Under the pieces are notes generated by a model. It saw nothing but the letters and a program-made list of their open reading frames with translations. It made no database searches and was not told the origin of the DNA. A stretch of 64,000 nucleotides of DNA from Octopus bimaculoides. Its lineage: Eukaryota. Position 1 is the first letter of the stretch. Each line of letters begins with the position of its first letter. A program made the translations under genes and the position numbers. This document shows, piece by piece, positions 55,034-55,410 of the stretch. The DNA lies in assembly GCF_001194135.2 (NCBI RefSeq), contig NC_068982.1, positions 31,278,617-31,342,616 of the forward strand. Reading direction: 5' to 3'.

Positions 55034-55410
55034 ATTATTTCTATTACAAGGCCTGCAATTTTGGAGGGAGTGGCTAGTCAATTACATCGACATCATTACT
55101 CGACTCATTTTACAACGTCGAAAAGATGAAAACTGAACCTAAAGCCGTTAACGTTTCTTATTTCGTTATTGCTCACAAGCGGATAAACATAGAGAGGACA
55201 AACAAGGACAGACATACGGATTAAGTCGATTACATCGACCTCAGTGCGTAACTGGTACTTAATTTATCGACCCCGAAAGGATGAAAGGCAAAGTAGACGT
55301 CTGCAGAATTTGAACTCAGAACGTAACGGCAGACGAAATACCGCTGAGCATTTCGCCCGGCATGCTAACGTTTCTGCCAGCTCACCGCCGTTAACGTTTC
55401 TACCAACCAA
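55034..55410 (-). mobile_element. Full SINE 2A inserted into the head of an older SINE 2B, with TSD
   Basis: GTTAACGTTTCT at 55147-58 and 55390-401 flanks the A copy; the remainder of the B head follows at 55402-55410+. Confidence 0.9.

What the first reader, a model, noticed from the sequence alone, without database searches (positions are those of the whole stretch)
55034..55410. Target-site duplication shows SINE 2A inserted site-specifically into another SINE's head
A complete A copy (head to tail) is flanked by a perfect GTTAACGTTTCT repeat (55147-58 and 55390-401; 15 bp if GCC is included), and the older B copy's own head continues beyond it. This shows an insertion event rather than only a pre-formed dimer, at the same site as the junctions at 36165 and 46989.
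Basis: seen in the sequence. Interest (0 to 1): 0.75.

Follow-up and report, generated by a model that had tools for sequence, protein, structure and literature searches.

The report
SINE nested in older SINE's head
A young 231-bp SINE unit sits inside the head of an older, decayed SINE and is flanked by a perfect 12-15 bp target-site duplication, so it is a real nested insertion; the claim that this position is a specific target is not shown, because the other two junctions in the window belong to a two-unit SINE that was copied as one piece.

Summary
On the minus strand the locus reads: B head (55416-55390), complete A unit (55389-55159), rest of B (55158-55034). AGAAACGTTAAC (15 nt with GGC) abuts both ends of A exactly (0 of 2000 shuffles). 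The 16 nt upstream of the repeat still match the SINE head in register. A is about 6% from its relatives with no indels. The surrounding B is about 28% diverged and has lost about 67 nt. So a younger A unit entered an older B copy.

The composites at 36 kb and 47 kb have no B head upstream and no inner repeat. Each carries its own duplication around the whole A-B pair, and the 36 kb flanks rebuild a third SINE. They are copies of one dimeric SINE family, not independent hits at this site.

The identical junction at 55 kb still needs a cause. It could be a true site preference. It could also be an A unit copied from a dimer RNA that was primed on the homologous B head (internal priming). A third option is a copy of a double-headed progenitor.

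No other octopus DNA could be reached: the run finder was closed and the collection scans found nothing. Ordinary biology with one neat detail.

The parts
55390..55416 (-). 5' piece of the older B-type SINE (B55): head positions 1-26 plus one leader base. It includes the upstream copy of the duplication (55390-55401).
   Evidence: The part beyond the repeat matches the head consensus at 10 of 16 positions in register.
55387..55401 (.). Upstream copy of the 15-nt direct repeat (GCCGTTAACGTTTCT on the + strand). The three bases 55387-55389 may instead be the first GGC of the A unit.
   Evidence: (D5).
55159..55389 (-). A55: a complete A unit of 231 nt, running from GGCGGTGAGCTGGCAG... to ...AACGAAATA(A). 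It has box A-like and box B-like motifs and its own A-type tail.
   Evidence: 87-90% identical to A36 and A47; no indels against A36, and A47 is one base shorter.
55144..55158 (.). Downstream copy of the 15-nt direct repeat. This is native B55 sequence.
   Evidence: (D5).
55034..55158 (-). Remainder of B55, from head position 15 to the B-type tail. It is heavily decayed: about 67 nt missing, 28% substitutions, and two TTTT runs.
36167..36397 (-). A36, the left unit of a dimer copy.
35972..36166 (-). B36, the right unit of the same dimer copy. It starts at head position 15/16.
36404..36412 (-). Upstream copy of the outer duplication TTTGTCCGG of the 36 kb dimer. The downstream copy is at 35955-35963.
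   Evidence: 3 of 2000 shuffles. The flanks rebuild SINE C.
46758..46987 (+). A47, the left unit of a dimer copy.
46988..47194 (+). B47, the right unit of the same dimer copy. The outer duplication ATAATTGA is at 46748-46755 and 47195-47202.
   Evidence: 126 of 2000 shuffles.

Best explanation
The 55 kb composite is a nested retrotransposition made in place.

Shown:
- An old B-type SINE (B55, about 140 bp after decay) already lay here on the minus strand.
- Later a cDNA of a complete A unit was integrated into B55's head. This duplicated 11-15 bp of the head (positions 15/16 to 26/29). One copy stayed with the first 26 nt of B upstream of A. The other stayed with the rest of B downstream.
- The A-B composites at 36 kb and 47 kb are not further events of this kind. 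They are copies of a dimeric SINE family, with a promoter-bearing left unit A and a right unit B truncated at head position 15/16. That family retrotransposes as one piece.

Inferred:
- Integration was by LINE-mediated target-primed reverse transcription. That is the standard route for SINEs and gives duplications of this size.
- A dimer family of this shape arises when an A unit comes to lie in front of a B copy. A has no TTTT terminator, so polymerase III starting in A can read through into B and use B's tail. The 55 kb locus illustrates that kind of event.
- The 55 kb locus is not the family's source. Its B part lacks sequence that B36 and B47 retain, and it now carries two TTTT terminators about 30 nt past the junction.

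Unresolved:
- Why the 55 kb junction is identical to the dimer junction. My leading candidates are homology-guided (internal) priming of a dimer RNA on the resident B head, and a genuine target preference.
For: - The repeat abuts both ends of A.
- The B head continues upstream in register.
- Removing A and one repeat copy gives a head-to-tail B-type element that aligns collinearly with B36, B47 and B63.
- Age asymmetry. Unique changes are 13 of 230 in A55 against 32 of 125 in B55. Leave-one-out divergence is 6.5% against 28% (Fisher p = 2e-6). All deletions are in B.
- No SINE-like remainder lies downstream of B55's tail (nhmmer --max, E <= 10). That excludes a dimer inserted into a third SINE.
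- The dimers move as units. They have outer duplications and no inner repeat, and SINE C is rebuilt from the 36 kb flanks.
- There is no TTTT in the 36 kb or 47 kb composites, but two in B55.
- E63 ends in an A-type 3' module directly followed by flank, so an A-type tail can serve as a terminal tail.
- Nested SINE insertions are expected in this kind of genome. SINEs make up 11.6% of the O. vulgaris genome (PMC13282606).
Against: - The junction coincides to the nucleotide with the dimer junction, at the same A tail end, the same B position and the same orientation. For a random insertion into a B of about 215 nt this is roughly a 1 in 200 to 1 in 400 event, so plain chance is unlikely and an extra cause is needed.
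- No free A monomer exists in this window. All 3 A units are followed by B, so the source RNA may not have been a monomer.
- The age asymmetry would also be seen if the whole double-headed composite had been copied here from another locus.
- The sequence is a draft scaffold with 12 N gaps, and no reads could be laid on it.
Confidence: 0.7

Rival explanations
1. The A-type SINE, or the LINE that moves it, prefers head position 15/16 of B-type SINEs. The dimer family's founder and the 55 kb locus are then two of many independent hits at this site.
For: - The junction at 55 kb is identical to that of the dimer family, and a chance hit at the same nucleotide is unlikely.
- The B halves of the two dimers are about twice as diverged from each other as their A halves: 45 of 194 against 25 of 230, p = 0.0009; 32 against 18 of 150 in the homologous segment, p = 0.04. 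That would fit dimers formed more than once from old B copies.
- Octopus genomes hold recently active Dong-R4 and L1-Tx1 LINEs (PMC13282606). From my own knowledge, those clades include sequence-specific members.
Against: - Only one in-place event is demonstrable. The other two junctions are retrocopies.
- B36 and B47 share derived bases (GTCTTTATG where A has GCCGTTACG). This points to one common B-unit ancestor.
- E63 has an A-type tail and inserted next to (ATT)n, not in a head.
- The 36 kb dimer nested into another SINE at positions about 54-62.
- The target sequences of the insertions seen here share no motif.
Confidence: 0.25
2. Homology-guided internal priming. The template was an A-B dimer RNA. 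A nick in the resident B55 head exposed a 3' end that paired with the start of the RNA's B unit (GAAACGUUAGC, 11 bp with one G-T pair). Reverse transcription ran from there through the frozen junction and the A unit. Only A was added, and the junction is identical by descent.
For: - It explains in one step the identical A tail end, the identical B position and the same orientation.
- All A units in the window are parts of dimers, so dimer RNA is the likeliest A-containing template.
- There is a precedent. Internal priming on dimeric Alu transcripts has been proposed to yield left monomers, with base pairing between the insertion site and internal RNA sequence (PMC5322556).
- The left edge of the repeat coincides with the first base of the dimer's B unit, as this model requires.
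Against: - It is not distinguishable from a monomer insertion using this one locus.
- It is not known whether the octopus LINE partner tolerates internal priming. LINEs that recognise a specific 3' tail usually start at the RNA's 3' end.
Confidence: 0.25
3. The whole double-headed composite (B head, A, B) was formed at another locus and retrotransposed here as one unit. The transcript would have started at the upstream B head.
For: - The upstream B piece keeps a box A-like motif (TGGTAGAAACG).
- A possible decayed outer duplication (ATAATTA and neighbours) flanks the whole composite.
- The age asymmetry between A and B would be inherited from the source locus.
Against: - The outer repeat is not significant (452 of 2000 shuffles).
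- B55's tail and body are badly decayed, and B55 holds two TTTT terminators about 30 nt past the junction. Those would stop polymerase III unless both arose afterwards.
- No second double head exists in the window.
Confidence: 0.08
4. There is no true duplication. A dimer copy landed beside or inside an unrelated SINE head, and the repeat is just homology between two heads. Alternatively, the arrangement is a scaffold assembly artefact.
For: - The 12-mer differs from the family head consensus by only one base, so two heads could share most of it.
- The window is a gapped draft.
Against: - No remainder of a third SINE follows B55's tail.
- Both copies share the non-consensus A and the following GGC.
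- B55 is much older than A55, so the two are not one dimer.
- A 15-nt overlap is not a typical assembler join.
Confidence: 0.04

Closest known systems
Dimeric SINEs formed by joining two monomers (primate Alu from FLAM + FRAM; Urop of shrew moles, PMC13023118)
   Same: Two related SINE units are joined at a fixed junction. The left unit supplies the polymerase III promoter. The pair amplifies as one element with duplications around the whole dimer.
   Different: - Here the two units are of different subfamilies. A has an 18-nt insert and a different 3' module.
- The right unit lacks its first 14-15 nt.
- One locus shows the left unit inside a complete right-type element with its own duplication. 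That is the kind of intermediate usually not preserved for Alu.
Internal priming of dimeric SINE or small-RNA transcripts giving 3'-truncated (tailless) retrocopies (PMC5322556)
   Same: A left unit alone is inserted, ending at the inter-unit junction, with base pairing between the target and an internal part of the RNA.
   Different: - That work concerns mammalian L1.
- Here the complementarity would come from a resident homologous SINE head, not from an A-rich stretch.
- It is not shown to operate in cephalopods.
Ordinary nested retroposon insertions (transposition-in-transposition analyses, PMC3014933)
   Same: A younger element sits inside an older one, flanked by a duplication of the host element's sequence. 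The age order is readable from divergence.
   Different: The insertion point coincides exactly with the junction of a dimer family built from the same two element types.
Octopus SINE families OK, OR1 and OR2 (Ohshima and Okada 1994, as cited in PMC4824008 and PMC4758252; OR1/OR2 are counted among CORE-SINEs)
   Same: Short elements with a tRNA-like head carrying box A-like and box B-like motifs, a conserved middle and a short A-rich tail, abundant in octopus DNA.
   Different: - I could not obtain those consensus sequences, so identity with A or B is untested.
- ARAGORN and the Rfam tRNA model do not call the heads.
- A from-memory MIR core comparison was not significant.
Sequence-specific non-LTR retrotransposons (R2, R4/Dong, Tx1 groups; from my own knowledge)
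   Same: These would be the model if A truly homed to one position of another repeat.
   Different: They show many independent insertions at one nucleotide. Here only one in-place event is demonstrable, and related elements inserted elsewhere.

Membership tests
Target-site duplication of a retrotransposed insert | A direct repeat abutting both ends of the insert. | tested here: met
   A 12-nt repeat (15 with GGC) lies at distance 0 from both independently defined ends; 0 of 2000 shuffles.
Target-site duplication of a retrotransposed insert | Removing the insert and one repeat copy restores a continuous pre-existing sequence. | tested here: met
   The rebuilt B55 (140 nt) aligns head to tail with B36, B47 and B63. 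Its head continues upstream in register.
Target-site duplication of a retrotransposed insert | An empty site exists in other individuals or related species. | not testable with these tools
No octopus DNA was found in the metagenome or genome collections.
Dimeric SINE family amplified as a unit | The same junction between the two units at several loci. | tested here: met
   GAAATAA|GAAAYGTT is present at 36166/7, 46987/8 and 55158/9.
Dimeric SINE family amplified as a unit | A duplication flanks the whole dimer, with none around the left unit alone. | tested here: met
   36 kb: TTTGTCCGG, 3 of 2000 shuffles, and the flanks rebuild SINE C. 47 kb: ATAATTGA, 126 of 2000 (weaker). The inner controls are negative. 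The 55 kb locus does not fit this pattern.
Dimeric SINE family amplified as a unit | Both halves of a copy are equally diverged. | tested here: inconclusive
   B36 against B47 is 23% and A36 against A47 is 11% (p = 0.0009). In the homologous 150 nt p = 0.04. Yet B36 and B47 share derived bases.
Site-specific retroelement | Many independent insertions at the same nucleotide of the target. | tested here: not met
   There is one in-place event (55 kb) and two retrocopies of a dimer. E63 and the 36 kb dimer inserted at other kinds of site. The sample is a single 64-kb window.
tRNA-derived SINE | A head recognisable as tRNA, with internal box A and box B. | tested here: inconclusive
   Box A-like TGGCAGAAACG and box B-like GAGTTCAAATTCC are visible in the sequence. 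There is no ARAGORN call and no Rfam tRNA match even at E <= 10.
CORE-SINE (octopus OR1/OR2) | A conserved CORE domain in the middle of the element. | tested here: inconclusive

The most novel reading that the evidence does not exclude
A-containing SINE RNA is joined again and again at nucleotide 15/16 of resident B-type (or any related) SINE heads. The guide would be either base pairing between the dimer RNA's internal B start and genomic heads, or the target choice of the partner LINE. SINE-into-SINE homing would then be the routine way this dimer family is born and renewed, and the 55 kb locus would be a preserved in-place intermediate.
Probability: 0.3. Interest if true: 0.55.

Novelty: new member of a known kind. 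Interest (0 to 1): 0.3.

Why it matters
Dimeric SINEs such as Alu are among the most successful mobile elements. The step that first joins two monomers is rarely preserved. This locus shows one concrete route: a promoter-bearing unit inserted into the head of an older SINE, with the duplication still intact. If a genome-wide census showed the same position hit repeatedly, it would point to homology-guided or sequence-directed SINE integration in cephalopods. SINEs make up more than a tenth of those genomes. As it stands, this is a clean but ordinary nested insertion, useful mainly as a dated marker and as an illustration.

Tried and rejected
External data (all failed):
No runs could be found, so read laying could not be used. 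There is therefore no read-level check of the assembly, no empty-site alleles and no k-mer copy counts.
- A 66-aa ORF spanning the B-head/A junction was used to look for SINE copies in the protein collection. No candidates.
- Two conserved SINE motifs were scanned in metagenome contigs and genome contigs. Zero hits in all four scans.
- Exact look-up of a 156-aa LINE ORF from the window: not on record.
- A LINE RT ORF was used to reach other contigs. The best relatives are only 65-72% identical. The one contig fetched (L001, 20 kb) has no A or B SINE, so the genus is not in that collection.
- SINE sequence strings were searched in papers. None found.

Ideas rejected:
- The 55 kb locus as birthplace of the dimer family. 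B55 lacks about 67 nt that B36 and B47 retain, and it is far more diverged than A55.
- A dimer inserted into a third SINE. No remainder lies downstream.
- Microhomology between the A tail and the target as the cause of the site. The tail is retained in full at the junction.
- The 26-nt head fragment at 63242-63267 as a second truncated head ending at the same position. It is the true 5' end of a different element of about 415 nt, E63.
- Weak Rfam matches (mir-8, snoZ40, Ysr209) are chance.

Full report
**What is there.** On the minus strand, 55416-55034 reads as three parts.
- A 27-nt SINE head piece, AGGCAGTTGGTTGGTAGAAACGTTAAC (55416-55390).
- A complete 231-nt SINE unit, A55, from GGCGGTGAGCTGGCAG... 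to ...AACGAAATA (55389-55159).
- The rest of a B-type SINE, starting AGAAACGTTAACGGC and ending in a B-type tail (55158-55034).

Two other A units lie at 36167-36397 (minus strand) and 46758-46987 (plus strand). Each is followed, at the same nucleotide, by a B unit that starts at head position 15/16.

**Is the repeat a real target-site duplication?**
- The ends of A were fixed independently, from where the three loci stop aligning upstream and from the shared A/B junction.
- The 12-mer AGAAACGTTAAC touches both ends with no spacer. None of 2000 shuffles gave a match that long.
- The next three bases (GGC) also match, but they equal the first three bases of the A consensus. The first A could belong to the A tail. 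The duplication is therefore 11-15 nt.
- The 12-mer differs by one base from the head consensus of the family. I therefore asked whether two unrelated heads could mimic a duplication. That would need a third SINE whose remainder follows the B tail. A maximum-sensitivity profile search found nothing SINE-like between 54700 and 55033.
- The 16 nt upstream of the repeat match the head consensus at 10 of 16 positions in register, and most mismatches are transitions. Only 56 of 120,734 window 16-mers do as well.
- Removing A and one repeat copy gives a head-to-tail B element that aligns with B36, B47 and the free B monomer at 63270-63464.

**Relative age.**
- A55 has 13 unique changes in 230 aligned sites and no indels against A36. 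A36 has 14 and A47 has 9.
- B55 has 32 unique changes in 125 sites and lacks about 67 nt, plus two smaller gaps.
- Against leave-one-out consensus the figures are 6.5% for A55 and 28% for B55 (Fisher p = 2e-6 on the all-sequence version).
- A is therefore much younger than the B around it.
- These values sit near the SINE/LINE burst at Jukes-Cantor distance 0.065 and the older wave near 0.2 described for O. vulgaris (PMC13282606). I could not verify the species of this window.

**The other two junctions are not independent insertions.**
- Upstream of A36 and A47 there is no B head. Neither locus has an inner repeat; the longest shared strings are 4 nt.
- Each A-B pair is instead flanked as a whole by its own duplication.
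  - 36 kb: TTTGTCCGG at 36404-36412 and 35955-35963 (3 of 2000 shuffles).
  - 47 kb: ATAATTGA at 46748-46755 and 47195-47202 (126 of 2000, so weaker).
- The two flanks of the 36 kb pair are the two halves of an older SINE, C. 36405-36457 matches head positions 7-60 and 35883-35962 matches positions 54-133.
- So A-B is a dimeric SINE that retrotransposes as a unit. In that case it nested into another SINE at a different position.
- Neither dimer copy contains a TTTT run. A polymerase III transcript started in A could therefore run through B to its tail.
- B36 and B47 share derived bases (GTCTTTATG where A has GCCGTTACG). This fits one common B-unit ancestor.

**What the 55 kb locus is not.**
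- It is not the birthplace of that family. B55 lacks sequence that B36 and B47 keep. It is far more diverged than A55. It carries two TTTT runs about 30 nt past the junction.
- It is not a standard dimer copy. It has the B head and the inner duplication.

**The open point: why the junction is identical.**
- The A tail end, the B position and the orientation all coincide with the dimer junction. For a random hit in a B of about 215 nt this is roughly a 1 in 200 to 1 in 400 event.
- I see three non-chance explanations.
The A-type tail can act as a terminal tail. E63 (62855-63267) ends in the same 3' module and is followed directly by flank. But E63 sits beside (ATT)n, not in a head. The insertion targets seen here share no motif.
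  - (b) Internal, homology-guided priming. All three A units in the window are parts of dimers, so the template may have been a dimer RNA. The nicked B55 head can pair over 11 nt with the start of the RNA's B unit. Reverse transcription from there would add exactly A plus the frozen junction. Internal priming of dimeric Alu transcripts yielding left monomers has been proposed (PMC5322556).
  - (c) The whole double-headed composite was copied here from elsewhere. The TTTT runs, the decayed tail and the non-significant outer repeat (452 of 2000) make this less likely.
- One locus cannot separate (a) from (b).

**An unexplained detail.** The B halves of the two dimers differ twice as much as their A halves: 45 of 194 against 25 of 230, p = 0.0009. 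In the homologous segment the counts are 32 against 18 of 150, p = 0.04. This could mean several dimer source lineages with a conserved promoter unit. It could also mean repeated formation of dimers from old B copies. It keeps explanation (a) alive.

**Family assignment.**
- The elements look like tRNA-type SINEs. They have box A-like and box B-like motifs, a conserved middle and short A-rich tails.
- A and B share head and core. A has an extra 18 nt and a different 3' module.
- ARAGORN and Rfam do not recognise a tRNA in the heads.
- Octopus SINEs OK, OR1 and OR2 are on record (cited in PMC4824008 and PMC4758252). I could not obtain their sequences.

**Limits.**
- Four collection scans, one exact protein look-up and two protein searches gave no other DNA of this genus.
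- All conclusions rest on one 64-kb gapped scaffold (12 N runs) with three A units.

**Verdict.**
- The nested insertion is supported (about 0.7).
- Site specificity is not shown (about 0.25-0.3).
- This is a new example of known processes, namely nested SINE insertion and dimer formation. The one notable feature is the coincidence of the junction.

Noticed in passing
window 35828-35962 and 36398-36457 (minus strand): An older SINE (C) is split by the 36 kb A-B dimer at head positions about 54-62, with the duplication TTTGTCCGG. Six extra bases (TTTTAA) lie between the upstream copy and the dimer's 5' end. This is a second same-orientation SINE-in-SINE nesting in the window, at a different position.
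   Followed up: yes
window 62855-63267 (minus strand): E63 is an element of about 415 nt. It shares only the first 26 nt of the SINE head (21 of 26 identical). It then has an unrelated body with a possible box B (GGTTCCACC). It ends in the A-type 3' module (AATAAAGAAAGAA). This looks like a further SINE family built from the same end modules.
   Followed up: partly
window 62798-63582: A full-length B monomer (63270-63464) and E63 lie head to tail, separated by TTATTATCATTAA. Both are embedded between long (TAA)n/(ATT)n tracts (62798-62855 and 63465-63582). The window has seven such tracts. Either these elements prefer (TAA)n targets or the tracts are expanded tails. O. vulgaris is reported to have recently active Dong-R4 LINEs (PMC13282606).
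   Followed up: partly
window 35972-36397 and 46758-47194: The right (B) halves of the two dimer copies differ from each other about twice as much as the left (A) halves (23% against 11%). This is not expected if both halves simply decayed together after copying.
   Followed up: partly
window: 5' junctions at 55389, 55414, 36397, 46758, 63461, 63267: In five of the six SINE 5' ends the GGC start is preceded by AA (TAA or AAA); at A55 it is preceded by AAC (TTAAC). This is either a 2-nt transcript leader or a preference at the 5' junction.
   Followed up: no
window 49723-51249 (+) and 63617-63934 (+): There are degenerate LINE fragments. One is a reverse-transcriptase ORF (RVT_1, E = 1.9e-7). 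Others are RT-like ORFs, one with a Cys/His-rich C-terminus, that have no Pfam hit. The best relatives in the protein collection are only 65-72% identical.
   Followed up: partly
window: 12 N runs, e.g. 56394-56475, 42466-43225, 27752-28392: The window is a gapped draft scaffold with many microsatellites (81 TRF rows). Repeat-rich stretches may be imperfectly assembled.
   Followed up: no
window 63585-63650 and 50674-50736: A perfect 34-nt tandem duplication (1.9 copies) lies just upstream of the RT ORF. A 17-nt repeat of 3.7 copies lies upstream of the 156-aa LINE ORF.
   Followed up: no
window 27035-27192 (+), 29532-29626 (-), 33896-33975 (-): Further old, partial copies of the same SINE group were found only by profile search. 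None has an interrupted head.
   Followed up: no
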